DNA of 64,000 nt from NCBI GenBank assembly GCA_010909165.1, contig MU008181.1:806001-870000 (forward strand). Reading direction: 5' to 3'. This stretch comes from Anthoceros angustus (taxonomy: Eukaryota; Plantae; Anthocerotophyta). This document shows, piece after piece, positions 5,121 through 51,007 of this stretch. A program made the position numbers and the translations under genes. Below the pieces are notes generated by a model. That model had not been told where the DNA came from and made no database searches. It saw only the letters and a list, made by a program, of their open reading frames with translations. How positions within the stretch are numbered: the first letter of the stretch is position 1; every line of letters starts with the position of its first letter.

Positions 5121-6300
5121 CTACAAGACATGCGGGGACCTGATGTCGGACGTACCCTGACTGAGCGAGCCGTTGAAGCCCAGCACGGGCTTGCCGAGGT
5201 CAGACATGGCCGCATCCCGCTCCTGCGCCAGCTGCAGAGCCACCACCTCCAGAGCCTGCGTCTCCTGCTGCAGCCGGGCAACCCCCGCGGCCACCTCCTT
5301 CAGCTGCCTCACCTCCTCCAGCGCAGCGTCCCTCTCCGCAGCCAGCTGCAGCGCCACCGTCTCTAGCGCGGTATTCTGCTCCCGCAGCTGGTTCAGCTCC
5401 TGGTTCAGGAGCTCCTCCAAAGACCGCATCCGCTCCGTCATGGCCACCACCGCGCTCTTGAGCCCCGACACCTCCGCCAGCGCCGAGTCCCGCTCCTCCG
5501 CCAGCTGCATGGCCACAGCCTCCAGCGCCTCCTTCTCCGCAGCCATCCGCAGCCCCGCCTCCCCTCCCCTGCACCTTCAGCTTGTTCACCTCCGCGGCCA
5601 GATTGCTCACCTCCGACGCCAGATGCACCAGCGCCTCCTTCACGGCCGCGTCCAGATCCGCCGGCAGCGCCATCGCCAGCTCCCCCCCGGGCCCCGGCTT
5701 TCCCTGCCCCGCCTCCACCAGCTCCATCACCGCCTTGATCGGCGAGTCCGGCACTAACCTCACCGGCCTACCCTGCCAGATCCGGCTGACCACCAGCATG
5801 GCGTACGCCACTCCCACCGTCTGCATCGCCTCCGGCACGAACGGCACCACGTCCACCGAGCTCAGCAGCGAGGCGGAGAACTGCAACCCTAGAGCACCTG
5901 CAGCAAGAATCAGCACCATCTTCCCCTTGCTCACTCCCAGCGCTTCCGACAGCCGGTCCACCATCTCCATCAAACCCCCGCCTCCCTGCCTCTCCTCCTT
6001 CTCCGTCTCTTTCTCCTTCCCCTTCCCCTTCCCCTTCCCAGCCGCTTCCGCAGCAGCCGCACCAGCACTGCCGCCATAGCCGCTCTTGCTCTTGCTCTGG
6101 CTCTTCTCCTTGCTCTTTCCGATTCCCTGGAACCTCAAATTCAGTGTCGGAGGCCCCCGCTTCTGCTTCTCGGCCACCTCGTACTCCTCCGAGAGCTTGC
6201 ACCGCACCAATGCCGCGCGCCTAGCAGCGACCCTGCGCGGGGAGGCCGAGACCCCGGCGACCCGGGCCAGGCCGCCCCGGCCCAGCGCCAAGGCGTGCAT
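5121..6300 (-). CDS. Plastid-targeted CAAD/CURT1-like membrane protein with C-terminal repeated coiled-coil; one apparent 1-nt frameshift near 5550-5575
   Basis: Arg/Ala-rich transit peptide ending VRC; CAAD-like hairpin VLILAAGALGLQFSASLLSSVDVVPFVPEAMQTVGVAYAM. ORF 5121-5546 continues in another frame with three ALExVAxQLAxERDxA repeats. Confidence 0.7.
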
Positions 6301-6726
6301 GGCTGGGGCTAGCAGCGATCCTTCTACCGTCCTCTCTGCCGCTCCTCATGAAACCGAGCCAGGGCCGCGGAATTGGCGTGCCTGCAACACCGCGGGAAGG
6401 AGCTCGCTTCCCTCATCACCCCTGCGACGCCATAGCCAGACACCGCGACAGCGCGACACCGACAACCACTTAGGTCTGGGCGGAACGGAGTGATGACGGG
6501 TGATTCGTATGAGGCGAGGAAGCCGATGACGGGGAACGAAATGTATGTGGCTCTGTGTAACACTTGAAAAAACCACCAACTTGGCGCCCACTCGGCAGCC
6601 TGCTGCGCACTGACTGGCTTGTTCGAATTCGACCTGTGTAAATATCTGTCACGCACGATCGGGTCTCTCCACCACGCATTTTTCTTCCGCTAGAGAGAAG
6701 CTCCCAACTCGAGGTCGAGCCGGGCC
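6301..6726. promoter_or_regulatory. Probable bidirectional promoter shared by the CAAD gene and Lhca5
   Basis: Only 426 bp separate the divergent start codons. Confidence 0.5.
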
Positions 6727-7977
6727 ATGGCATCATCCGCGGCGGCCTCGCCCTGTTCCTGCTCCCTGCTTCCCGGCGCCTTGCGGCCTCCCGCTGCTCC
6801 GGCAGCCTCCAGGCGATTTTCTTATCAAGGCGCCCGGCGATGGCCGCAGCTGGGGCTCTCTGTCAGGGCCGCGGCAGCAACCTCTGGCGGGGACACCGCT
6901 TCTGCCGAAAGGCCTCTCTGGCTGCCAGGCTCCACGGCCCCGGAGCATCTTGATGGCTCGTAAGTCGGCCTGTATGGACATTGTTTTTGCCGACATTTGC
7001 CGACATTTGCCAACATTTGATCCAGTGGGAATGGGAAATGATTTTTGCAGTCTTCCGGGGGATTTTGGGTTCGATCCTCTGCAGCTCGGGAAGGACCCGC
7101 AGGACCTCCGGTGGTATGTTCAGGCAGAGCTCGTGCACGCCCGGTTTGCGATGGCCGGGGTTGCCGGCATTCTCTACACTGATGTGAGTTCTGGGTGAAT
7201 TGGGAACGGGATTTTTTGTTTCGCTGCTGTGGGCATTTTGCATGGACGCATCTTTCACTGCCTTGCAGTTGCTGCGAGTTACAGGTTTGAAAGACCTGCC
7301 TGTTTGGTTTGAAGCTGGGGCAACTGAATTTGAGTTTGCAGACACGAGGACGCTCTTCTTTGTACAATTGCTGTTGATGGGGTAAGGAGAATCAGATTTG
7401 CAATCCCTCGTTTGCCGAGATTGTATGCTTTGCGTTGGAGTGAAACTGGTGACTTTTTTCCAGGTTTGTGGAAACCAAGAGGTACATGGATTTCAAGTCT
7501 CCTGGGTCCCAGGCAGCTAAAGATTCATTCTTCGGCCTGGAAGCAGGCTTTGAGGGTTTAGGCGCTGGGTGAGCATGATGACCTCAGGAAGCAAGCTAGC
7601 TATTTTCTGTCTTGACATCTGGTATGGCAGGTATGCTGAATCCGCTTCACGTTGGGCATCAGCTATCCTGCAGGTCCTTTCTTCAACCCGCTAGGATTGG
7701 CCAAAGACCTCTCCAAGGATAGTGGTTTGAGACTCAAGGAAATAAAAAACGGTAAGGCAGCTCGTGTTATCGTCACCCATGTCCAGCCTTGCTGCTCCTT
7801 TTTCTGTCTTAGGAGGTCTTATGGGCGGTCTCCCATGTTACAGGGCGGCTTGCCATGGTTTCCATCGTGGGCTTCTTCGTTCAGGCGTCCATCACCAAAG
7901 TTGGGCCGCTGGAGAACCTCGTACAACATCTGTCAGATCCGTGGCATAACACGGTTCTGCAAGCTCTGTCCCACTAA
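6727..7977 (+). CDS. LHCA5: Light-harvesting chlorophyll a/b protein Lhca5 (6 exons)
   Basis: Spliced product ERPLWLPG...[13 protein letters not shown]...[30 protein letters not shown]...LPVWFEAGA...[17 protein letters not shown]...LKEIKNGRLAM...[24 protein letters not shown] and RYMDF-SPGSQA match Lhca5. Confidence 0.9.
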
Positions 7978-40095: not shown

Positions 40096-40354
40096 TAACA
40101 TCGCCATATGTGGACACAATGATGATGTTCACTCACGGTGCCTCATTGATTGCCCGGGAGAAGACCAGATGCTGGTGCGGTGCCCGGATGGATTACAGAA
40201 ACGGTTTGATAATTTCATCATCTTGATGCCGTGTACTAGGGGATAACCAATGGAACAGAGTGATTTCCTTGTATCTCTGAGCTGCTTCATGGAGGTCTGA
40301 GATCACGTGTTTTGCTTACCGTTGTGCTATAACTTAGAAGGTCTGTCTGCCTCA

Positions 40355-43300
40355 TCAATTGCCTGAAGCCAAAGGCTCCTTCCCCCGGTTTGAACTAGAT
40401 ATATCTTGGATCTGCCCTTCTTTCGAACTCCCGCTCCTCTCAGTGTCAGTAGGGTCAGATTCCTGAGTAGGCTCCGATTCCTCTGTAGCCTCCGATACCT
40501 GTGTAGCCTCCGATACCTCTGTAGCCTCCGATTCCTCAGTAGGCTCAAATTCCCCCGTGGGCTGGAGTTCCTCGATAAGCAGAAATTCCCCGAGAGTCTG
40601 AACTTCCCCAGTCGGCTGAACTTCCCCAGTAGGCTGAACTTCCTCAGTAGGCTCAAGATCCCCAGTAGGCAGGGATTCTTCAGAAGTCAGAAATTCCTCC
40701 GCCAGCAGGGATTCCGGCACCAAAGCGTTACGTACAAGGACAATCGGTGTCTGTTCCTCGGCGTTGCCTGGAAACATGAATGAGAAAACATGAGTACTGT
40801 TGATCTCCGCACAGACACTAGGTTTTCAGGGTAACCTACCAGCAGGATTGTTCATAAGCGCAGCCTTTAAGGCCTGTTTGTCCACACCGTCGGATGCCTG
40901 TTTGGCATAAACGAATCAAACTGGTAAGAGCGAACTGGTACAGAACCCGAACTGGTACAGGACCCGAACTGGTGCAGGACCGGAGTCCAAAACGATTGGT
41001 CTCCAGCTTTCATCCTACTTACAGCTAGAATTTGGACCTTCTTCAAGTCATTGACGTCCACTACCGCAATATCAAGCCCTGTAACCATGGTCGGTGATGC
41101 AATGATCAGGCCCGGAAGGATAGCAGAGTAAAGGAATAAGAACTAAGGTGGTTTCCAACGGAGTGCACACTGACCAGTTTTTGCCTTCAAGGCATCGACA
41201 GTATCCTTCACGTGGACCTGCCAGTGTATGAGGTGAGAATTGCAACCAATATCAAACTGATGCAGATAACAAACCCGAAAGCACTGCTGACTCACTGGTC
41301 CCAGCGTGATAAACTGATCGTATGGTGGGAGAGTTCCACTCACGTCATCTATAAGTCTTGCCTGTCGGATGCATGGACAGAAGAATGTTACTGCCGACAG
41401 GCAAGGACAAGCAAGACTCTACTGAAAATTGGCACCATCCTTATTACGAAAGAAACTGGGTGCTTGATACATGTATACGAGACCTGCTGTCCAGCCAGAC
41501 GGTAGAACATCCCTCGAATTCCTACTAGTCTGCACAAATAAAAGTATTCCCACATGATCTTGCTTATAAACTCGATAAGAGTCCTCTCATGACAACAACT
41601 CAAAAAACTCACCTTGCAGCCACAGCGATTATCACAGCGAACACAACCCTCAGCCTTCCAGATATGTCGACAAGAGTCTGTTACAGTGCTAGGTTAGCCC
41701 TCTGCTGCTAGGCTTTGCAGTGCAGAATCTCTAGGCAAACACAGAATTCACTTATACCTGCATCCCGCAGGCAGTGGCCAATGACGATGTAGGATGAAAC
41801 AAAAGGCAAGCCAGTTTTGCAACCAGACCTGGACGAACATTTTGCGGATGACGAAACCGTCCTGTACAGCAGGGGCATCAGTTGTACACCTGTTTCTCAA
41901 CATACATGCAGAATAAGGAACATCCATAACTTCACCGGGCAATGCAACACAATACTTACCCTGCATGATTGCCAATGGAGTTTCCGCAATTGCAATGACA
42001 TCACCAGCCTTTGCATATGGCAGGACATAACTGCAACCACCAAGGTATCTGGTTAAGACATCACAAGCCCCCACCCCAACAAATAGTAGATGGGCAACTG
42101 CTATACTCACGTTTCAAGAACGTTCACTGGGTCATCCAAATGACAAAGAAGATGCGTTTGAATTGGAAGAACATTCCTCTGGTCTGGTCTGCATGAACAA
42201 AGAGCCGCACCCAGTTAAGGTCAAGTATATACCAGGGCACTCTCTCAGAACCCTTATCTCAGCGGCAGATGGTTACTCACGTCTGCAAGCTGAGATCCTC
42301 AGCAGAAGCTTCAGAGTAGTTCAAGGGCAGAACAACATGTTGAGAATGCAAGCCACGACCGTGTGGACCATATGAGACATAGGCAACCTCCAGACGGACA
42401 GCCTACCACCAAACATTGTCTTTCAGATTCCTCCGCAGATGAGGGCCAAGTCAACGTTGAGCACAACTAAGTTATCAAGACAGACATCATTTTAGTTAGT
42501 CATATCAAACTAAACCCAGATTATAAAGTCTCACCAAGCAAGATGGTTGTGTCTTTAAGAGTTCATGCCTGAAGTTCCTTCAAAGATCCTCCAAAGATGG
42601 TCTGTATGTCCACAACGACCTGCAACCAAGCAGAGGTTGTAGCCATTAGCAGAAACCCTCCTCTACAAACACAGACGGAAAACTACAACATATAGTACTG
42701 GCATCATACTTCCATAAACGTAGACTCTCCAGCACGGGTGATGTACGCTTGCCAATATCCATCATCTCGCGCACTGGGCTTGCCTCCAGGATGCCGAGGC
42801 ATAACCTGCAATTGGGCTCAGTGAGTATTTCAGGCACAAGCTAAAGAAACCTGTGACAAATTAAACGCCACCAATCACCATCGTACCTTCACAGTCGAAT
42901 GTATGTTTTGTAGGCCACCTTTCGACAACAAGCGTATTGTGGCTTTCACCTCAGGCACAAAGAGCTCAAATTTCTTGGTGATATTGCAGAACCTGCAACG
43001 CCCGCAGTCCTGATAACGTTCAAAACAGTCTACTGAAATGAAAACCCAGTACTCCAGACAACAAGCACATACTCCAGGGTGCAAGCATCACGTACTGCAT
43101 CTGGCCCCGCAGTCGGTAATGGGTAGGCTGCCTCAGCTCCCAACCCCACAGCCCACGGGTGAGCACTAACCCATCACCAGGCTTTTTCTGCACCCGCAAA
43201 ACAACATCGTCCCACCAGTGATACCCTCATCAGCGCCCAAGTCCCAGCAGGCAAGAATTCCGTAACCGGTAGGCATCACGAGACCTGAATTGACAGAAGG

Positions 43301-43617
43301 CGTGGCAATTCCCGGGAGAGCCAGTGAATGTTGCGCATGCCGTAGGTGCAGTCCCGAGGAGGTATCCGGGTGGCCTGCCGATTGTCTGCCGGGACGGAGG
43401 TAACGGCTTCAGAGGAAGCTCCAGAGCCAGCTTCAGCATTGGCTACAGCACGAACCAGCTTCTTGGTCCCATCCTTCCACCCTCGCCTGAAAGACGGAGA
43501 GGGCGACGGCCCATCTTTGTGGCCCACTTCAACGCCCCTGCATCTGGGGACTCGGAAAAGAGGCTCAGAGTGCCGCAAAGAGTGACATGGTGGGGCAGCG
43601 AGCATGGAGGCACACAT
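40355..43617 (-). CDS. Plastid-targeted cyanobacterial-type F420-0:gamma-glutamyl ligase (CofE/F420_ligase) family protein, multi-exon, with acidic repeat tail
   Basis: Exon peptides [123 protein letters not shown] and [16 protein letters not shown] match, from memory, the cyanobacterial family. Transit-peptide-like first exon. Confidence 0.8.
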
Positions 43618-44099
43618 CGTTCCACCACGCTGCACAAGCCAGAGCTGCCGAAACCATTAACCAGCAAATGTGATCTTCTTCATCATCTTGCCGGCCTCTC
43701 AAAGCTCATCCGTGTCAGGTGAAACAGACCTCTGTTCTCAGAGCTCTGTTCATTAACTGTAAAAGCACAGGGAATGAAATGCGCTCGATTTGGCAAGCCT
43801 TCCCCGGACGGAACGGATAGCGTGCCTGGATTGATGATGAAATTTACTACAATCTTTGCTGTCCTATCACATCATCCAGACAGATGTCGTTCCATTCACG
43901 TTACGATCGTGAAACAAATTTGTCTAATACGTACCGTAAAGTGCAATTCCCATGAAGTTCTTATAAGAGTGGGGAAGCGAAGGATTGCATCAAATCGGGG
44001 AGGCCATGGCGAGACTTCGAGACAGTAATATCTTATCTGACATCAGTCTCAGGGACGGGTTTCGACATCAGTGTCCTGGAGGGTTGCTACGTCTTCCAG

Positions 44100-47372: not shown

Positions 47373-48038
47373 ATGCCACAAGCCGAATGCTTGCTTACAT
47401 TTGATCCGGATTACAAAGAATGGGCTAACTCCATCCAAGATATAAAAGATGGAAATAGACCGGGCAGGTCAGAAAGATGCTGCTCCATTTCAACTGATGG
47501 GCTCCAGCAGGAAGGTTTGCATGGGATACTAGGGAATCAGACCATGAGATGGCGCCTTGGCAGAGCAGCACACAGACTGACAAGGACATTTGTTCAATCA
47601 ATTCATTCTTGATTGTGGAGTTCGTCATCTACAACCAGCAAAGGGATTTCCATTACAGACAGCAGGTGAGACGTGCCAAAAGTGCTGGAGAAACGGCTTA
47701 AAACATCATCGAGCTGCTCCTGACGCCAATCTAATCGCCAATCAAGGGCTGTGGCGGCTGTTACAAAGTTGTGCCCAAAATGCTTCCAAACATTTGAGAG
47801 TGCTAGTCAACGATCGAGACAGATGGCAGCGTTCAAGGTGGCCGTCTCGTGCTTGGCTGAATGTGCGAAAGGGCGGATAGTTGCTCGGTTTTGTGTAGAC
47901 ACCTTGCCTTGATGGGTAATGGCCAGCCATAGCATGGCCAGAATTAGACTAGACTGGGTGCTACAAATGCCATCTGGAGGTAGGTAAGGATACAATGCAG
48001 AGTGCTAATCAGGAGCGGGAGAAATCGCAGCGTTGAAG

Positions 48039-48482
48039 ATGGCCCATTCCTCCAACCTATCGCTGCTGGCCACAGGGCTGCTGCTGGTGGCTTTGGTATT
48101 TTATATGCCAGACAGAACGACGTCGCTGGAAGTGTCAACCAACAAACTGCTGCAAAACCAAGCCCTGTTTGTGGGTTCGCATCTGGTGTTGCCACCCTAC
48201 GAGTTCCTCATGCAGAAGGACTGCAACCTCGTGCTGTACAACGAGAACAATCCTCTGTGGGCGTCCAACACCACGGACACTATTTTCGAGAGCTGCTACT
48301 TCTTGTTACAGCCGGACGGGAATGGTGTGCTCTACAACTCATGGAACGATGCGCTTTTTGCCACCGACACCTGGGGCCGCAACGATGGGGCGCATACCAT
48401 CACCCTCCAGAGCGATGGGAATGTGGTCATGACCAATGCCCAAGGTGACGCCATCTGGCAGACCTATACCTCCGGTCGATAG
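48039..48482 (+). CDS. Secreted bulb-type (GNA-like) mannose-binding lectin
   Basis: Signal peptide; three QxDxNxVxY-type sites (QKDCNLVLY, QPDGNGVLY, QSDGNVVMT); LWASNT motif. Confidence 0.9.
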   Translation: MAHSSNLSLLATGLLLVALVFYMPDRTTSLEVSTNKLLQNQALFVGSHLVLPPYEFLMQKDCNLVLYNENNPLWASNTTDTIFESCYFLLQPDGNGVLYNSWNDALFATDTWGRNDGAHTITLQSDGNVVMTNAQGDAIWQTYTSGR

Positions 48483-48652: not shown

Positions 48653-51007
48653 TTAATTTCGGTCCCCACATGAGCAGGAGCCATCTGAAAAATGGTGCAC
48701 TCTGTGAGCATCTCTGACTATGATCTCTCGCTGCTCTAGGCGGGACATAATCTTGGTGCTGCTGTGGCAGTCGTTGCACATGCGAAGGTTTTTAGTGACT
48801 AGCAGCGGGGTGCCATCTGGAGTGTTTAGGAGACCGTACGCCAAAGCCAGCTTCTCTGCATGGCCACACAACGCATCTTCCTTCTCCTGCTCGGACATGG
48901 CCTTCAGCACCAGCTCTGTCTGAGATACATGGCCGCCCTCCTCCTTCAGCCTCATGTGCACACTTTTCAGCTTGGAAGAGATGTCAGGCCTCTCCTCACC
49001 CACTGTGAACTCGTGCACCTTGTTTTTCACCTCAATGCACGCCTTTGCAGGCTTCTTCGTCGCACCTGCTGACCTTCTTAAGCTCTCTATCCTATCTACA
49101 TCCATCCACCTGCCTGCGTTTGCATATATGTTGGCCAGCAACACATATGAACTTGCGTTCTCAGGCTCCAATGACACGAGTCGATCAAAACATCGCTTAC
49201 CACGCTCTATGTCACCATGGTTTCTGCAGGCACTCAACAACGATCTCCAACCCACCACATAGTCTTTGAATGGCATTGTCTGCAGTATATGTTCTGCATG
49301 GTCCAGACAGCCAAACCGCCCAAGAAGATCAACCAGGCAACTGTAGTGATAATCAGTAGGCACAATGCCATGGTCCTCCACCATGAGCCTGAAGTACCGC
49401 TGGCCCTCTTGCACCAGGCCTGCATGACTGCATGCAGCAAGAAGACTACTGAAAGTCGTCCCATTAGGCTCCAAACCTTGCCTACGCATTTCTTCGAAAC
49501 ACTGCATTGCCATCTGAGCATCACAGTGTTCAGCATAGCCATTTAGCAGAGCACTCCATGATACCACATCTCGAGTGGGCAATCTGTCAAAGATTGCACG
49601 AGCATCCTTCAAGCTTCCGCACTTTGCGTACATGTCCACCAGGCAGCTACCAATTAGGACATCGGTGTCCAGTCCCTTTTCTCGTATCAGGGCATGAAGT
49701 TGCTTCCCTTGAAGCAAAGCTCCCACCCCGGCACATGCTTGAAGGAGGCATACAAAGGTAACCTGATTGGCTACAGTGATGCCCTCATGTTGCATACTCC
49801 TATACAGACAAAGGGCTTCATGACCCTTACCCTGCTGGACATACCCTGCAATCATGGTGGTCCATGTTACAACATCTCTTCTACCCATTGTGTCGAACAC
49901 TTCCCGAGCATCCTCTAGGCTCCCACATTTTGCATACATGTCAACTAGACAGTTTCCAACCACTAAATCAGCCTCCAGTCCGCTTTCCCTAAGCTGAGCA
50001 TGAATCTTCTTCCCCTGGTGCAAAGCTCCGACGCTAGCACATGCTTGAAGGAGGCAGACAAACGTAACTACATTGGCTGGAGTCATACCATTCAGTTGCA
50101 TACTTGCATACAGATCAAGAGCCTCTTGACCCATTCCTCTCCGAGCATATCCTGCAATCATTGAAGTCCAGGACACCACGTCCCTCGTATGCAATCTGTC
50201 AAACACCTTACGGGCATCCACCAAGCTCCCGCATTTCGAATACATGTTCACCAGGCTGTTGGTTACAAAGCTGTTGGGCCTCACATCACTCGCCCGAATA
50301 TCGGCATGAACCTCCTGACCAGACACCAGATCCTCTGCACTTGCGCACGCCTTAAGGACTGCAACAAATATGTGGTTGTTGGGCTTCAGATTCGAGCCTC
50401 GCATCTGTCGATAAAGCCTGACAGCTTCCATGGGCTGTCCATGTCGGGCATGGGCCAAAATGATGCTAGCCCACAGATGGGTGTCTGGTGCAGTCACTTT
50501 GCTGAAAACCTGAGCCGCTTCCTCCAATTTCCCATGGGAGGCATACATATCGACGATGTGCGTGGCCACGAATGCATTTGACTCGAACCCGCTCTCCAGA
50601 GCCAGAACATGCACCCGCCTCCCAAGCTCCAAATTCTCCGGTCCCGCCGTGCACCTCTTCAGAACACGAGAGAAGAGAGAGGTGTCAACACGACACTCCT
50701 GCTGCACCAGGAGGTCCAAAGCACCAACAGCCTCCCTGAGCTCTCCATCCTCAAAAAGCCTCCTGGAGGTTCTAGCCATCAAATCCACTCCACCCTTCCG
50801 CTTCCTGCGAACCACACCATCGTTGCCTGCAGTTCTTGAACTGGACGCAGACAGCTCCAAGGCCGCCAACCCAGGATTGTGTCGAGCGTTTCCCCAAACC
50901 CCCTTGCAGAACTTGTGCCCCAAGTCAGGCTGGAGGAAGATTTTGCCATAGCCCACGGTAAAGGCTCGCTGAGTAGTGCAGCTGCGCAAAGTATGTCCGC
51001 CATCCAT
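48653..51007 (-). CDS. Intronless PLS-class PPR protein with E1-E2 and DYW:KP domain (C-terminus DRN)
   Basis: PLS triplets; KKPAKACIEV replaces the PG-box; HAEKLA; CNDCH; ends GSCSCGDRN. Confidence 0.93.
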   Translation of the reverse strand: MDGGHTLRSCTTQRAFTVGYGKIFLQPDLGHKFCKGVWGNARHNPGLAALELSASSSRTAGNDGVVRRKRKGGVDLMARTSRRLFEDGELREAVGALDLLVQQECRVDTSLFSRVLKRCTAGPENLELGRRVHVLALESGFESNAFVATHIVDMYASHGKLEEAAQVFSKVTAPDTHLWASIILAHARHGQPMEAVRLYRQMRGSNLKPNNHIFVAVLKACASAEDLVSGQEVHADIRASDVRPNSFVTNSLVNMYSKCGSLVDARKVFDRLHTRDVVSWTSMIAGYARRGMGQEALDLYASMQLNGMTPANVVTFVCLLQACASVGALHQGKKIHAQLRESGLEADLVVGNCLVDMYAKCGSLEDAREVFDTMGRRDVVTWTTMIAGYVQQGKGHEALCLYRSMQHEGITVANQVTFVCLLQACAGVGALLQGKQLHALIREKGLDTDVLIGSCLVDMYAKCGSLKDARAIFDRLPTRDVVSWSALLNGYAEHCDAQMAMQCFEEMRRQGLEPNGTTFSSLLAACSHAGLVQEGQRYFRLMVEDHGIVPTDYHYSCLVDLLGRFGCLDHAEHILQTMPFKDYVVGWRSLLSACRNHGDIERGKRCFDRLVSLEPENASSYVLLANIYANAGRWMDVDRIESLRRSAGATKKPAKACIEVKNKVHEFTVGEERPDISSKLKSVHMRLKEEGGHVSQTELVLKAMSEQEKEDALCGHAEKLALAYGLLNTPDGTPLLVTKNLRMCNDCHSSTKIMSRLEQREIIVRDAHRVHHFSDGSCSCGDRN

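What the first reader, a model, noticed from the sequence alone, without database searches (positions are those of the whole stretch)
40355..43617. Intron-rich plant gene for a cyanobacterial-type F420-0:gamma-glutamyl ligase family protein
Seen: spliced exons give motifs ([51 protein letters not shown]) that I recognise from cyanobacterial proteins annotated as F420-0:gamma-glutamyl ligase, behind a transit-peptide-like first exon. Known: CofE glutamylates F420-0 in archaea and actinobacteria; plants are not known to make F420, although some algae and cyanobacteria make its precursor FO (8-HDF) as a photolyase antenna. Inference: an endosymbiont-derived plastid amide ligase with an unknown substrate, pointing to an uncharacterised plastid cofactor or metabolite pathway in seed-free plants.
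Basis: partly seen in the sequence, partly recalled or inferred. Interest (0 to 1): 0.8.

Follow-up and report, generated by a model that had tools for sequence, protein, structure and literature searches.

The report
Plastid CofE-fold ligase gene, substrate unknown
This is a real, spliced and expressed plant nuclear gene inherited from the cyanobacterial ancestor of the chloroplast. Its protein has the fold of the enzyme that adds glutamates to coenzyme F420, but F420 is very probably not what it acts on, and no function is known for the family.

Summary
A 16-exon gene on the minus strand (ATG 43617, stop 40355) gives an 1800-nt reading frame of 599 codons.

The protein has four parts:
- a basic N-terminal extension of about 85 residues
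- a CofE-fold domain
- an acidic repeat tail of about 118 residues, absent from the homologues compared

The CofE fold was shown on the Marchantia orthologue: pLDDT 91, and Z 14.6 against A. fulgidus CofE. At sequence level the link is weak. PF01996 scores below its cut-off and NCBIfam finds nothing.

Orthologues are 60-67% identical in bryophytes, lycophytes, ferns and a conifer. They are 50-54% identical in ~390-residue proteins from at least 531 cyanobacterial genomes. The tree fits a single, vertically inherited plastid origin.

- The family is not confined to seed-free plants.
- Its distribution does not follow FO synthase.
- It lacks CofE's C-terminal segment, which stacks on the deazaflavin.

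Two new leads came up. In cyanobacteria a tandem-GNAT gene sits directly downstream in 75 of 80 loci. In eukaryotes the family's distribution resembles that of plastid peptidoglycan synthesis. No characterised orthologue was found.

The parts
43285..43617 (-). Exon 1 (residues 1-111). ATG at 43617. The first ~85 residues are an N-terminal extension that cyanobacterial homologues lack, and it looks like a transit peptide.
   Evidence: The X1 contig is continuous over 43285-43700. An in-frame stop lies upstream at 43659-43657. Composition of residues 1-85: R+K 15%, D+E 8%, S+T 15%, A 13%. Homology to the family starts near residues 85-110.
43096..43187 (-). Exon 2 (residues 112-142), start of the beta-sandwich domain
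   Evidence: Joints 43187/43285 and 42990/43094 (+2) in X1. AG/GT checked. tblastn HSP 43184-43092.
42887..42992 (-). Exon 3 (residues 142-177)
   Evidence: X1 piece 42885-42990; GT-AG after a +2 shift.
42710..42805 (-). Exon 4 (residues 178-209)
   Evidence: X1 piece 42708-42803; GT-AG after a +2 shift.
42569..42619 (-). Exon 5 (residues 210-226), followed by the only GC-AG intron (42568-42403, 166 nt)
   Evidence: Joint 42617/42708 is shown for X1. The lower end is inferred from the 51 contig letters between the neighbouring pieces. Of the equivalent cuts only the GC..AG one has standard splice ends. The reading frame matches the family consensus.
42281..42402 (-). Exon 6 (residues 227-267), end of the beta-sandwich domain
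   Evidence: X1 piece 42281-42400 and joint 42188/42281.
42111..42188 (-). Exon 7 (residues 267-293), start of the CofE-fold domain (about residue 271)
   Evidence: X1 piece 42111-42188; tblastn HSP.
41960..42030 (-). Exon 8 (residues 293-317), motif [12 protein letters not shown]
   Evidence: Joints 42030/42111 and 41860/41959. The family signature E[TS]P[LVI]A[ILV]MQG was used as a scan pattern.
41758..41861 (-). Exon 9 (residues 317-351), motif [11 protein letters not shown]. This exon was the search query.
   Evidence: X1 piece 41758-41860; 42 relatives found with this exon alone.
41613..41677 (-). Exon 10 (residues 352-373)
   Evidence: Joints 41677/41758 and 41529/41613.
41484..41529 (-). 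Exon 11 (residues 373-388), motif FYRLAGQQ
   Evidence: Joints 41529/41613 and 41360/41483.
41296..41361 (-). Exon 12 (residues 389-410), [16 protein letters not shown]
   Evidence: Joints 41360/41483 and 41215/41294.
41175..41217 (-). Exon 13 (residues 411-425)
   Evidence: Joint 41215/41294 in X1. The lower end comes from the GT donor and the contig length budget.
41023..41078 (-). Exon 14 (residues 425-443), VDVND
   Evidence: Joints near 41076/41174 and 40875/41022 in the related runs. The length budget of the X1 contig requires 56 nt.
40840..40897 (-). Exon 15 (residues 444-463)
   Evidence: Joint 40766/40839 in all four runs.
40355..40767 (-). Exon 16 (residues 463-599 plus the stop). 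It holds the end of the CofE-fold domain ([12 protein letters not shown], to about 40718) and then the acidic repeat tail.
   Evidence: X1 piece 40300-40766; translation.
40358..40711 (-). Acidic low-complexity C-terminal tail absent from the homologues compared (residues 482-599; D+E 26%, S+T 25%). It is encoded partly by an 18-nt tandem repeat at 40446-40670.
   Evidence: Tandem Repeats Finder: period 18, 12.5 copies. Composition. Homologues end a few residues after the VLVR motif. Related species show indels just upstream of the tail, at 40688-40704.
42316..43187 (-). Ig-like beta-sandwich domain (window residues about 112-255; genomic span includes introns)
   Evidence: Mapped from the AF2 model of the Marchantia orthologue. 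VIA-align Z 8-9.4 to GAE/adaptin-ear and ApaG folds over model residues about 6-171.
40718..42178 (-). CofE-fold domain (window residues about 271-479; genomic span includes introns)
   Evidence: Mapped from the AF2 model. Z 14.6, rmsd 3.1 A, 181 residues aligned to CofE 2PHN residues 2-222. Foldseek E 8e-7.

Best explanation
The gene encodes the precursor of a plastid protein of cyanobacterial origin. Shown: it is expressed and spliced (16 exons). It is the orthologue of a two-domain family of ~390 residues found in at least 531 cyanobacterial species genomes and in many green algae and non-flowering plants. Its C-terminal half has the CofE (F420-0:gamma-glutamyl ligase) fold and its N-terminal half is an Ig-like beta-sandwich. 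It keeps every invariant residue of the family. Inferred: the basic N-terminal extension of ~85 residues is a chloroplast transit peptide. Also inferred: the mature protein is a nucleotide-dependent amide-bond ligase working as CofE does, by activating a carboxylate as an acyl phosphate that is then attacked by the amine of L-glutamate or a similar amine. The acceptor is very probably not F420-0. The identity of the substrate is open. The acidic repeat tail is a recent, probably disordered addition.
For: Gene model and expression. Exon-by-exon homology. End-to-end alignment at 60-67% identity to land-plant proteins and 50-54% to cyanobacterial ones. All 31 invariant and 71 of 72 near-invariant residues kept. 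Fold: AF2 of the Marchantia orthologue with the family alignment gave pLDDT 91 and pTM 0.90. CofE chains are the top Foldseek hits (E 8e-7). VIA-align gives Z 14.6, rmsd 3.1 A over 181 residues, well above the next fold at 9.4. PF01996 is the only recurrent Pfam family, hit by 29 of 55 members with best E 7e-7. Origin: eukaryotic sequences form one group that follows the species tree, and the eukaryotic homologues examined carry N-terminal extensions. Against F420 as substrate: the family ends where CofE residue 222 aligns, so it has no counterpart of the segment holding R234, which stacks on the deazaflavin (with PMC10861534). No evidence exists that eukaryotes make F420 (PMC8498797). A CofE homologue can take another substrate: Chlamydia CT611 complements folC (PMC1971073).
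Against: The window's own joined protein was never folded or scanned. Fold and family evidence come from a 65%-identical orthologue and the family alignment. PF01996 is below its gathering score (16-19 bits against 25). NCBIfam gives nothing. Family profiles do not reach any CofE sequence in the PDB. Conservation of the GTP and Mn2+ ligands could not be checked residue by residue, so a non-catalytic role is not excluded. Plastid targeting was not tested with a predictor or an experiment. No enzyme activity is known for any member.
Confidence: 0.72

Rival explanations
1. The family belongs to the peptidoglycan or envelope biology that some plastids kept from cyanobacteria, for example as an amide ligase that modifies or recycles a muropeptide or a related envelope compound. 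This is a specific proposal for the unknown substrate.
For: Named eukaryotic members come from lineages reported to keep a complete plastid peptidoglycan gene set: Micromonas pusilla CCMP1545, Chloropicon, Cymbomonas, mosses, Selaginella, gymnosperms and all surveyed hornworts. Closterium, whose chloroplast division is sensitive to peptidoglycan-synthesis antibiotics, also has the family. Sources: against PMC4815162, PMC5741210, PMC12681378, PMC10784329 and PMC8964177. No named hit came from M. commoda, Ostreococcus, Bathycoccus, Chlamydomonas, Volvox or angiosperms, which are lineages with reduced sets. In cyanobacteria mltG (YceG) lies within 6 kb downstream on the same strand in 52 of 63 loci.
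Against: Asparagus and Citrus are reported to hold the full toolkit (PMC10784329), yet no angiosperm orthologue appeared. Absences rest on truncated hit lists and are weak for Chlamydomonas. Lineages that keep peptidoglycan genes keep many other ancestral genes as well. The family looks specific to cyanobacteria, whereas peptidoglycan is general to bacteria. The ruvX-DUF1292-mltG block is an old cluster in its own right (my own knowledge, not tested here). Glaucophytes were not assessed.
Confidence: 0.17
2. It works together with the tandem-GNAT acyltransferase encoded directly downstream in cyanobacteria to build an N-acylated, amide-linked small molecule. The logic would resemble the ligase-then-acetyltransferase steps MshC and MshD of mycothiol synthesis.
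For: The partner gene lies directly downstream on the same strand in 75 of 80 cyanobacterial loci. The pairing also holds in one divergent locus pair, L004/L005, taken for picocyanobacterial without a taxon check. The partner family has about 2600 clusters, and all named hits among the best 120 but one (a MAG labelled Actinomycetota) are cyanobacterial. Its AF2 model has two GNAT domains, and the best PDB matches are tandem GNATs including MshD and the clavulanate CBG protein.
Against: The 86 loci are biased towards filamentous orders and include many close relatives. Gene adjacency does not prove a shared pathway.
Confidence: 0.2
3. It is a true deazaflavin enzyme that glutamylates F420-0, FO or a related compound, in line with the database name and the reader's hint.
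For: The CofE fold, the weak PF01996 similarity and the database names. Cyanobacteria and some algae make FO for photolyases (PMC8498797).
Against: The family does not follow FO synthase. That enzyme is present in Chlamydomonas and mosses and lost in vascular plants (PMC6125616). This family is present in lycophytes, ferns and a conifer and was not seen in Chlamydomonas or Ostreococcus. FO has no carboxylate for an acyl-phosphate mechanism (established chemistry). There is no counterpart of CofE's R234 segment. No F420 is reported in eukaryotes.
Confidence: 0.04
4. It is an alternative folylpolyglutamate or dihydrofolate synthase, like the Chlamydia CofE homologue CT611 (FolC2).
For: CT611 complements an E. 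coli folC mutant (PMC1971073), so the fold can act on folates.
Against: Plants and cyanobacteria have canonical FolC/FPGS enzymes (established knowledge, not tested here), so no gap needs filling. Loss of the gene in angiosperms would be unexplained. The extra beta-sandwich domain and the low similarity argue for a different subfamily. No folate genes were seen in the neighbourhoods.
Confidence: 0.05
5. It is a non-catalytic protein, a binding or scaffold protein that only keeps the CofE fold.
For: Sequence similarity to active CofE is very low, about 18% over the aligned part. The catalytic ligands could not be checked. The Ig-like N-domain is typical of interaction modules.
Against: The invariant and near-invariant columns are rich in residues typical of active sites: D, E, H, R, C, S, T, Q and N, in blocks such as ETPxAxMQGR, [14 protein letters not shown], VDVND and NAxEQTP. 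This conservation spans cyanobacteria to land plants.
Confidence: 0.1

Closest known systems
CofE, F420-0:gamma-glutamyl ligase of Archaeoglobus fulgidus (AF2256; PDB 2PHN, 2G9I, 7ULD), Pfam PF01996
   Same: Same fold for the C-terminal ~210 residues: Z 14.6, rmsd 3.1 A, 181 residues aligned. PF01996 gives weak but recurrent hits. The mechanism class presumed here is GTP- and Mn2+-dependent carboxylate activation followed by glutamate addition (PMC8498797, PMC10861534).
   Different: Only about 18% identity, and below Pfam's cut-off. It has an extra N-terminal Ig-like beta-sandwich of ~160 residues. It has no counterpart of CofE residues 223-248, which include R234, the residue that stacks on the deazaflavin. 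It occurs in organisms not known to make F420.
FbiB N-terminal domain of Mycobacterium tuberculosis
   Same: A CofE-type gamma-glutamyl ligase domain fused to a second domain (PMC8498797).
   Different: FbiB's extra domain is C-terminal, of the nitroreductase type, and reduces dehydro-F420. Here the extra domain is N-terminal and is an Ig-like sandwich. FbiB did not appear among the listed fold matches.
FolC2 (CT611) of Chlamydia trachomatis, COG1478
   Same: A CofE homologue in an organism without the other F420 genes, which shows that the fold serves other substrates (PMC1971073).
   Different: It clusters with folate genes and fills a missing folC. The family here clusters with a tandem GNAT, ruvX and mltG, and sits in organisms that have FolC. 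The two were not compared directly.
The database group 'F420-0:Gamma-glutamyl ligase' of cyanobacteria and green plants, for example Leptolyngbya WP_190345038.1 and Marchantia Mp2g07820
   Same: The window's protein is an orthologue: 50-67% identity end to end, all invariant residues kept, same domain order.
   Different: The window's protein adds an acidic repeat tail of ~118 residues. The name of the group is an automatic transfer; no member has a tested function in the library I searched.

Membership tests
CofE / F420-0:gamma-glutamyl ligase (PF01996, COG1478) | CofE three-dimensional fold | tested here: met
   Tested on the Marchantia orthologue, which is 65% identical to the window protein. 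Foldseek's top hits are 2PHN, 2G9I and 7ULD at E 8e-7. VIA-align gives Z 14.6, rmsd 3.1 A, 181 residues. The window's joined protein itself was not folded.
CofE / F420-0:gamma-glutamyl ligase (PF01996, COG1478) | Score above Pfam's gathering cut-off for PF01996 | tested here: not met
   16.5-18.7 bits against a cut-off of 25 in 4 of 10 full-length homologues. 29 of 55 members hit at E <= 0.01, best 7e-7. Single exons of the window gave no hit.
CofE / F420-0:gamma-glutamyl ligase (PF01996, COG1478) | Match to NCBIfam models for CofE or FbiB | tested here: not met
   No NCBIfam family at E <= 0.01 for 11 homologues.
CofE / F420-0:gamma-glutamyl ligase (PF01996, COG1478) | Conserved GTP and Mn2+ ligands of the active site | not testable with these tools
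   No residue-level structural alignment and no CofE sequence by reference were available. Profiles and single sequences did not reach CofE in the PDB. The acidic blocks LIDD, VDVND and NAxEQTP are invariant or nearly so, which is suggestive only.
CofE / F420-0:gamma-glutamyl ligase (PF01996, COG1478) | Deazaflavin pocket including the C-terminal segment with R234 of the dimer partner | tested here: not met
   The alignment runs to the last residue of the model (395) and stops at CofE residue 222 of 248. R234 stacks on the chromophore (PMC10861534). The test is indirect, because only range ends are reported.
CofE / F420-0:gamma-glutamyl ligase (PF01996, COG1478) | Co-occurrence with the other F420 genes (cofC/cofD, FO synthase) | tested here: inconclusive
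   No cof genes lie within 6-8 kb in the six loci with called genes. Whole genomes could not be searched. The review reports no evidence that eukaryotes make F420. The reported FO synthase distribution does not match this family's distribution.
CofE / F420-0:gamma-glutamyl ligase (PF01996, COG1478) | F420-0:L-glutamate ligase activity | not testable with these tools
   This needs an enzyme assay.
Cyanobacterial and green-plastid beta-sandwich + CofE-like orthologous group | End-to-end alignment over both domains | tested here: met
   Window residues about 90-477 align with 60-67% identity to land-plant members and 50-54% to cyanobacterial members (local blastp). Exon-wise tblastn is colinear.
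Cyanobacterial and green-plastid beta-sandwich + CofE-like orthologous group | Signature motifs PTSSLATAC and E[TS]P[LVI]A[ILV]MQG, and the invariant residues | tested here: met
   Both motifs were the scan patterns that retrieved 531 confirmed loci, and both are present in exons 8 and 9. 31 of 31 invariant and 71 of 72 near-invariant columns are kept.
Cyanobacterial and green-plastid beta-sandwich + CofE-like orthologous group | Placement inside the land-plant clade of the family tree | tested here: met
   Quick IQ-TREE run on 59 rows. The window groups with land plants (SH-aLRT 96) and with mosses plus vascular plants (95). Eukaryotes form one side of a branch.
FolC2-type CofE homologues (Chlamydia CT611) | Clustering with folate genes and complementation of folC | not tested
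   Known only from PMC1971073. No folate genes were seen in the cyanobacterial neighbourhoods.

The most novel reading that the evidence does not exclude
This orphan two-domain ligase is an unrecognised component tied to the peptidoglycan layer that some plastids retained from cyanobacteria, or more broadly to an ancestral envelope or division function. It was lost together with that layer in most angiosperms, core chlorophytes and the small Mamiellales. In cyanobacteria it works with the adjacent tandem-GNAT enzyme. If so, it would give a new handle on how plastid peptidoglycan is made or modified.
Probability: 0.15. Interest if true: 0.75.

Novelty: new variant of a known kind. Interest (0 to 1): 0.5.

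Why it matters
Cyanobacteria and plants are not known to make F420. Yet at least 531 cyanobacterial species genomes in the scan, and many green algae, bryophytes, lycophytes, ferns and at least one conifer, keep a strongly conserved protein with the fold of the F420 glutamyl ligase. About 50% identity has been kept between cyanobacteria and land plants. Such a conserved enzyme-like protein with no known substrate points to an undescribed reaction in cyanobacteria and in the plastids of non-flowering plants. Its apparent loss in angiosperms explains why Arabidopsis genetics never met it. This work supplies three things for a direct test in Marchantia, Physcomitrium or a model cyanobacterium: a correct gene model, a confident fold and domain architecture, and two concrete leads (the tandem-GNAT partner and the resemblance to the plastid peptidoglycan distribution). 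On the other hand, orthologues are already in public databases under an automatically transferred name, so the gene itself is not a discovery.

Tried and rejected
- Pfam on 15 stop-free exon pieces found nothing apart from a chance zf-CXXC hit at E 0.03.
With a 121-aa stop-free piece most scan patterns fell in intron-derived sequence and nothing was confirmed.
- PDB sequence searches all failed to reach CofE. Tried: exon 9, the whole-family profile, the C-domain profile and a cyanobacterial C-domain. The last gave only a 47-residue match to a Shiga toxin A chain at E 0.05. I take that for chance and did not follow it.
- NCBIfam found nothing for the family.
- The search of earlier findings by F420/photolyase words found nothing in this genome.
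- The CofE structure paper PMC2678844 is not held, so active-site residue numbers could not be taken from it.
- I tried to see whether plants have the tandem-GNAT partner. The word search lists only the best 120 hits, all cyanobacterial or unnamed but one MAG labelled Actinomycetota. The Atlas shows only bacterial clusters. tblastn of the partner against the window found nothing. This stays unresolved.
- I considered a functional link to myxoxanthophyll synthesis, because cruF and cruG lie divergently upstream. I rejected it as a main reading: only 28 of 74 loci have cruF within 2 kb, the L004 locus lacks it, and plants do not make this carotenoid (the last point is my own knowledge).
- It was built only inside local scripts, for translation and for comparison with proteins already fetched.
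Full report
**The gene**

Read laying settled the structure. Run X1 holds one 3412-nt contig that matches the window without a single difference and skips 15 stretches. Every joint listed has CT..AC ends on the + strand, which is GT..AG for a minus-strand gene. A sequence without introns cannot be genomic DNA, so the contig shows a mature transcript, even though the run's label 'RNA' is only a guess. Contigs of three related organisms (88-95% identical) show the same joints.

After resolving the ambiguous cut positions the model has 16 exons:
- 43617-43285
- 43187-43096
- 42992-42887
- 42805-42710
- 42619-42569
- 42402-42281
- 42188-42111
- 42030-41960
- 41861-41758
- 41677-41613
- 41529-41484
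- 41361-41296
- 41217-41175
- 41078-41023
- 40897-40840
- 40767-40355

Introns are 72-166 nt long. Fourteen are GT-AG and intron 5 is GC-AG. Three boundaries were not printed for X1: the lower end of exon 5, and the junction between exons 13 and 14. I inferred them from the contig's length budget, the splice dinucleotides and the family consensus. The CDS is 1800 nt and encodes 599 residues. An in-frame stop lies 14 codons upstream of the ATG in the same exon.

**How the searches were done**

Single exons give no Pfam hit. Exon 9 alone (34 aa, by reference) was therefore searched against 1.84 billion representative proteins and found 42 relatives. Everything else was done on those relatives by id. 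The joined translation was used only inside local scripts, for comparison with proteins already fetched. Independent exon-by-exon support comes from tblastn of a Planktothrix protein against the window. It hits the exons in colinear order, from residue 30 at 43184 to residue 387 at 40730.

**What the protein is**

Window residues ~90-477 align end to end with full-length proteins:
- 60-67% identity to Sphagnum, Ceratodon, Calypogeia, Marchantia, Riccia, Diphasiastrum, Psilotum and the conifer Cryptomeria
- 54-56% to the ferns Adiantum and Ceratopteris
- 55-62% to streptophyte algae: Mesotaenium, Closterium, Klebsormidium, Chlorokybus and Mesostigma
- 50-54% to cyanobacterial proteins of ~390 residues

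The window's protein keeps all 31 invariant and 71 of 72 near-invariant columns of a 55-sequence alignment.

Residues 1-85 have no counterpart in cyanobacteria and are net basic and rich in S, T, A and P. The eukaryotic homologues examined carry such an extension. This fits a transit peptide but was not tested.

Residues 482-599 form an acidic tail (D+E 26%), encoded partly by an 18-nt tandem repeat. Homologues lack it.

**Fold**

AlphaFold2 of the Marchantia orthologue with the family alignment gave pLDDT 91 and pTM 0.90. The model has an all-beta domain followed by an alpha/beta domain.

- Foldseek's best PDB matches are the A. fulgidus CofE entries 2PHN, 2G9I and 7ULD (E 8e-7).
- VIA-align gives Z 14.6, rmsd 3.1 A and 181 aligned residues, matching model 187-395 to CofE 2-222. 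The next fold scores 9.4.
- The N-terminal domain matches Ig-like sandwiches (GAE/adaptin ear, ApaG) at Z 8-9, which is a generic similarity.

At sequence level the link to CofE is faint. PF01996 scores 16-19 bits against a cut-off of 25. It is hit by 29 of 55 members at E <= 0.01. NCBIfam gives nothing, and family profiles do not reach CofE in the PDB.

The family ends where CofE residue 222 aligns. It therefore has no counterpart of the CofE C-terminal segment whose R234, from the dimer partner, stacks on the F420 chromophore (PMC10861534). I could not check the GTP and Mn2+ ligands residue by residue.

**Origin and distribution**

All of the best 80 that carry a taxon name are cyanobacteria.

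In a tree of 59 sequences the eukaryotes form one group whose internal order follows the species tree: prasinophytes, streptophyte algae, Zygnematophyceae, liverworts, mosses, then vascular plants. The window's sequence sits inside land plants. The root is a midpoint only. This fits one endosymbiotic transfer followed by vertical descent.

Named eukaryotic members:
- Micromonas pusilla CCMP1545, Cymbomonas, Pyramimonas, Pycnococcus/Pseudoscourfieldia, Chloropicon, Tetraselmis
- the streptophyte algae listed above
- liverworts, mosses, Selaginella, Diphasiastrum, ferns and Cryptomeria

No angiosperm appears, although one would be expected to rank beside Cryptomeria. No named hit comes from Micromonas commoda, Ostreococcus, Bathycoccus, Chlamydomonas or Volvox. 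Those absences rest on lists cut at 120 rows and on a 34-residue query, so they are weaker.

**Function**

Shown: the fold, the conservation, expression and ancestry.

Inferred: a CofE-like mechanism, meaning nucleotide-dependent activation of a carboxylate followed by amide formation with glutamate or a similar amine (mechanism from PMC8498797 and PMC10861534).

F420-0 is an unlikely substrate for three reasons:
- The review finds no evidence that eukaryotes make F420.
- The chromophore-stacking segment is missing.
- FO synthase has a different distribution. It is present in Chlamydomonas and mosses and lost in vascular plants (PMC6125616).

The fold can serve other substrates, as the Chlamydia homologue CT611 shows by replacing FolC (PMC1971073).

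**Two leads**

*Lead 1: the cyanobacterial neighbourhood.* It is very stable.
- A gene for a 350-460-residue protein lies directly downstream on the same strand in 75 of 80 loci.
- It is followed by ruvX (63 of 73 loci), a DUF1292/DUF3727 gene (53 of 63), mltG/yceG (52 of 63), a HAD hydrolase and proB.
- cruF and cruG lie divergently upstream in about a third of loci.
- The downstream protein folds as a tandem GNAT (core pLDDT about 90). Its best matches are tandem GNATs such as the clavulanate CBG protein, VipF and mycothiol synthase MshD.
- A ligase followed by a tandem GNAT recalls the MshC and MshD steps of mycothiol synthesis. That is an analogy and nothing more.
- The loci are biased towards filamentous orders and include close relatives. 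Whether plants have the partner stays open.

*Lead 2: the eukaryotic distribution.* It resembles that reported for a complete plastid peptidoglycan pathway.
- The pathway is present in M. pusilla but not M. commoda, Ostreococcus or Bathycoccus. It is also present in class VII prasinophytes, mosses and Selaginella (PMC4815162).
- It is reported in Cymbomonas (PMC5741210), all surveyed hornworts (PMC8964177) and Picea (PMC12681378).
- Exceptions exist. Asparagus and Citrus are reported to have the full toolkit (PMC10784329), but no angiosperm orthologue was seen.
- Lineages that keep peptidoglycan genes keep many other ancestral genes too.
- I rate this reading at roughly one in six.

**Verdict**

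Three points need correcting. The family reaches seed plants (a conifer). The FO connection is not supported. The protein is a distinct two-domain variant that fails the sequence thresholds of the CofE family.

Orthologues are already deposited under an automatically transferred name. In the paper library I searched, none has a tested function.

The source organism was not identified. Short introns and the neighbouring DYW:KP-type PPR genes suggest a hornwort-like, lycophyte or fern genome.

Noticed in passing
L001-L086 (cyanobacterial loci), gene at about 6001-7100 of most loci: The gene order is highly conserved: cruG and cruF divergently upstream, then this gene, a tandem-GNAT gene, ruvX, a DUF1292/DUF3727 gene, mltG (yceG), a HAD hydrolase and proB. 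The tandem GNAT lies directly downstream in 75 of 80 loci.
   Followed up: yes
window 40446-40670 (last exon): An 18-nt tandem repeat (12.5 copies, 77% matches) encodes the acidic PTGE/EATE repeats of the C-terminal tail. Related species show indels just upstream of the tail, at 40688-40704, and many substitutions within it.
   Followed up: partly
window 42403-42568: Intron 5 is the only GC-AG intron. Contigs of related organisms show other joints here (42401 to 42534, and 42434 to 42569 with 19 extra letters). This suggests alternative splicing or divergence at this intron.
   Followed up: partly
window 40931-40981 (intron 14): A 17-nt tandem repeat, 3 copies, 94% matches.
   Followed up: no
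window below 40300 and above 43700: The X1 transcript contig runs 1065 nt beyond the stretch on the 3' side of the gene and about 400 nt beyond it on the 5' side. This means either long UTRs or a merger with transcripts of neighbouring genes in an unstranded assembly.
   Followed up: no
window 48653-51007, minus strand: A 784-residue intron-less ORF with PPR repeats and a DYW-like end (...SCSCGDRN).
   Followed up: no
window 48033-48482, plus strand: A 149-residue ORF whose sequence looks to me like a bulb-type (GNA-like) mannose-binding lectin domain. This is from memory and was not tested.
   Followed up: no
proteins P0019, P0021, P0001 (Closterium) and P0111 (Riccia sorocarpa): Some deposited models of this family are much longer (857-869 aa), carry two copies of the exon-9 motif, or carry an unrelated domain (PF17807). 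One member of alignment A1 carries CobW_C. These are probably fused or duplicated gene models.
   Followed up: no
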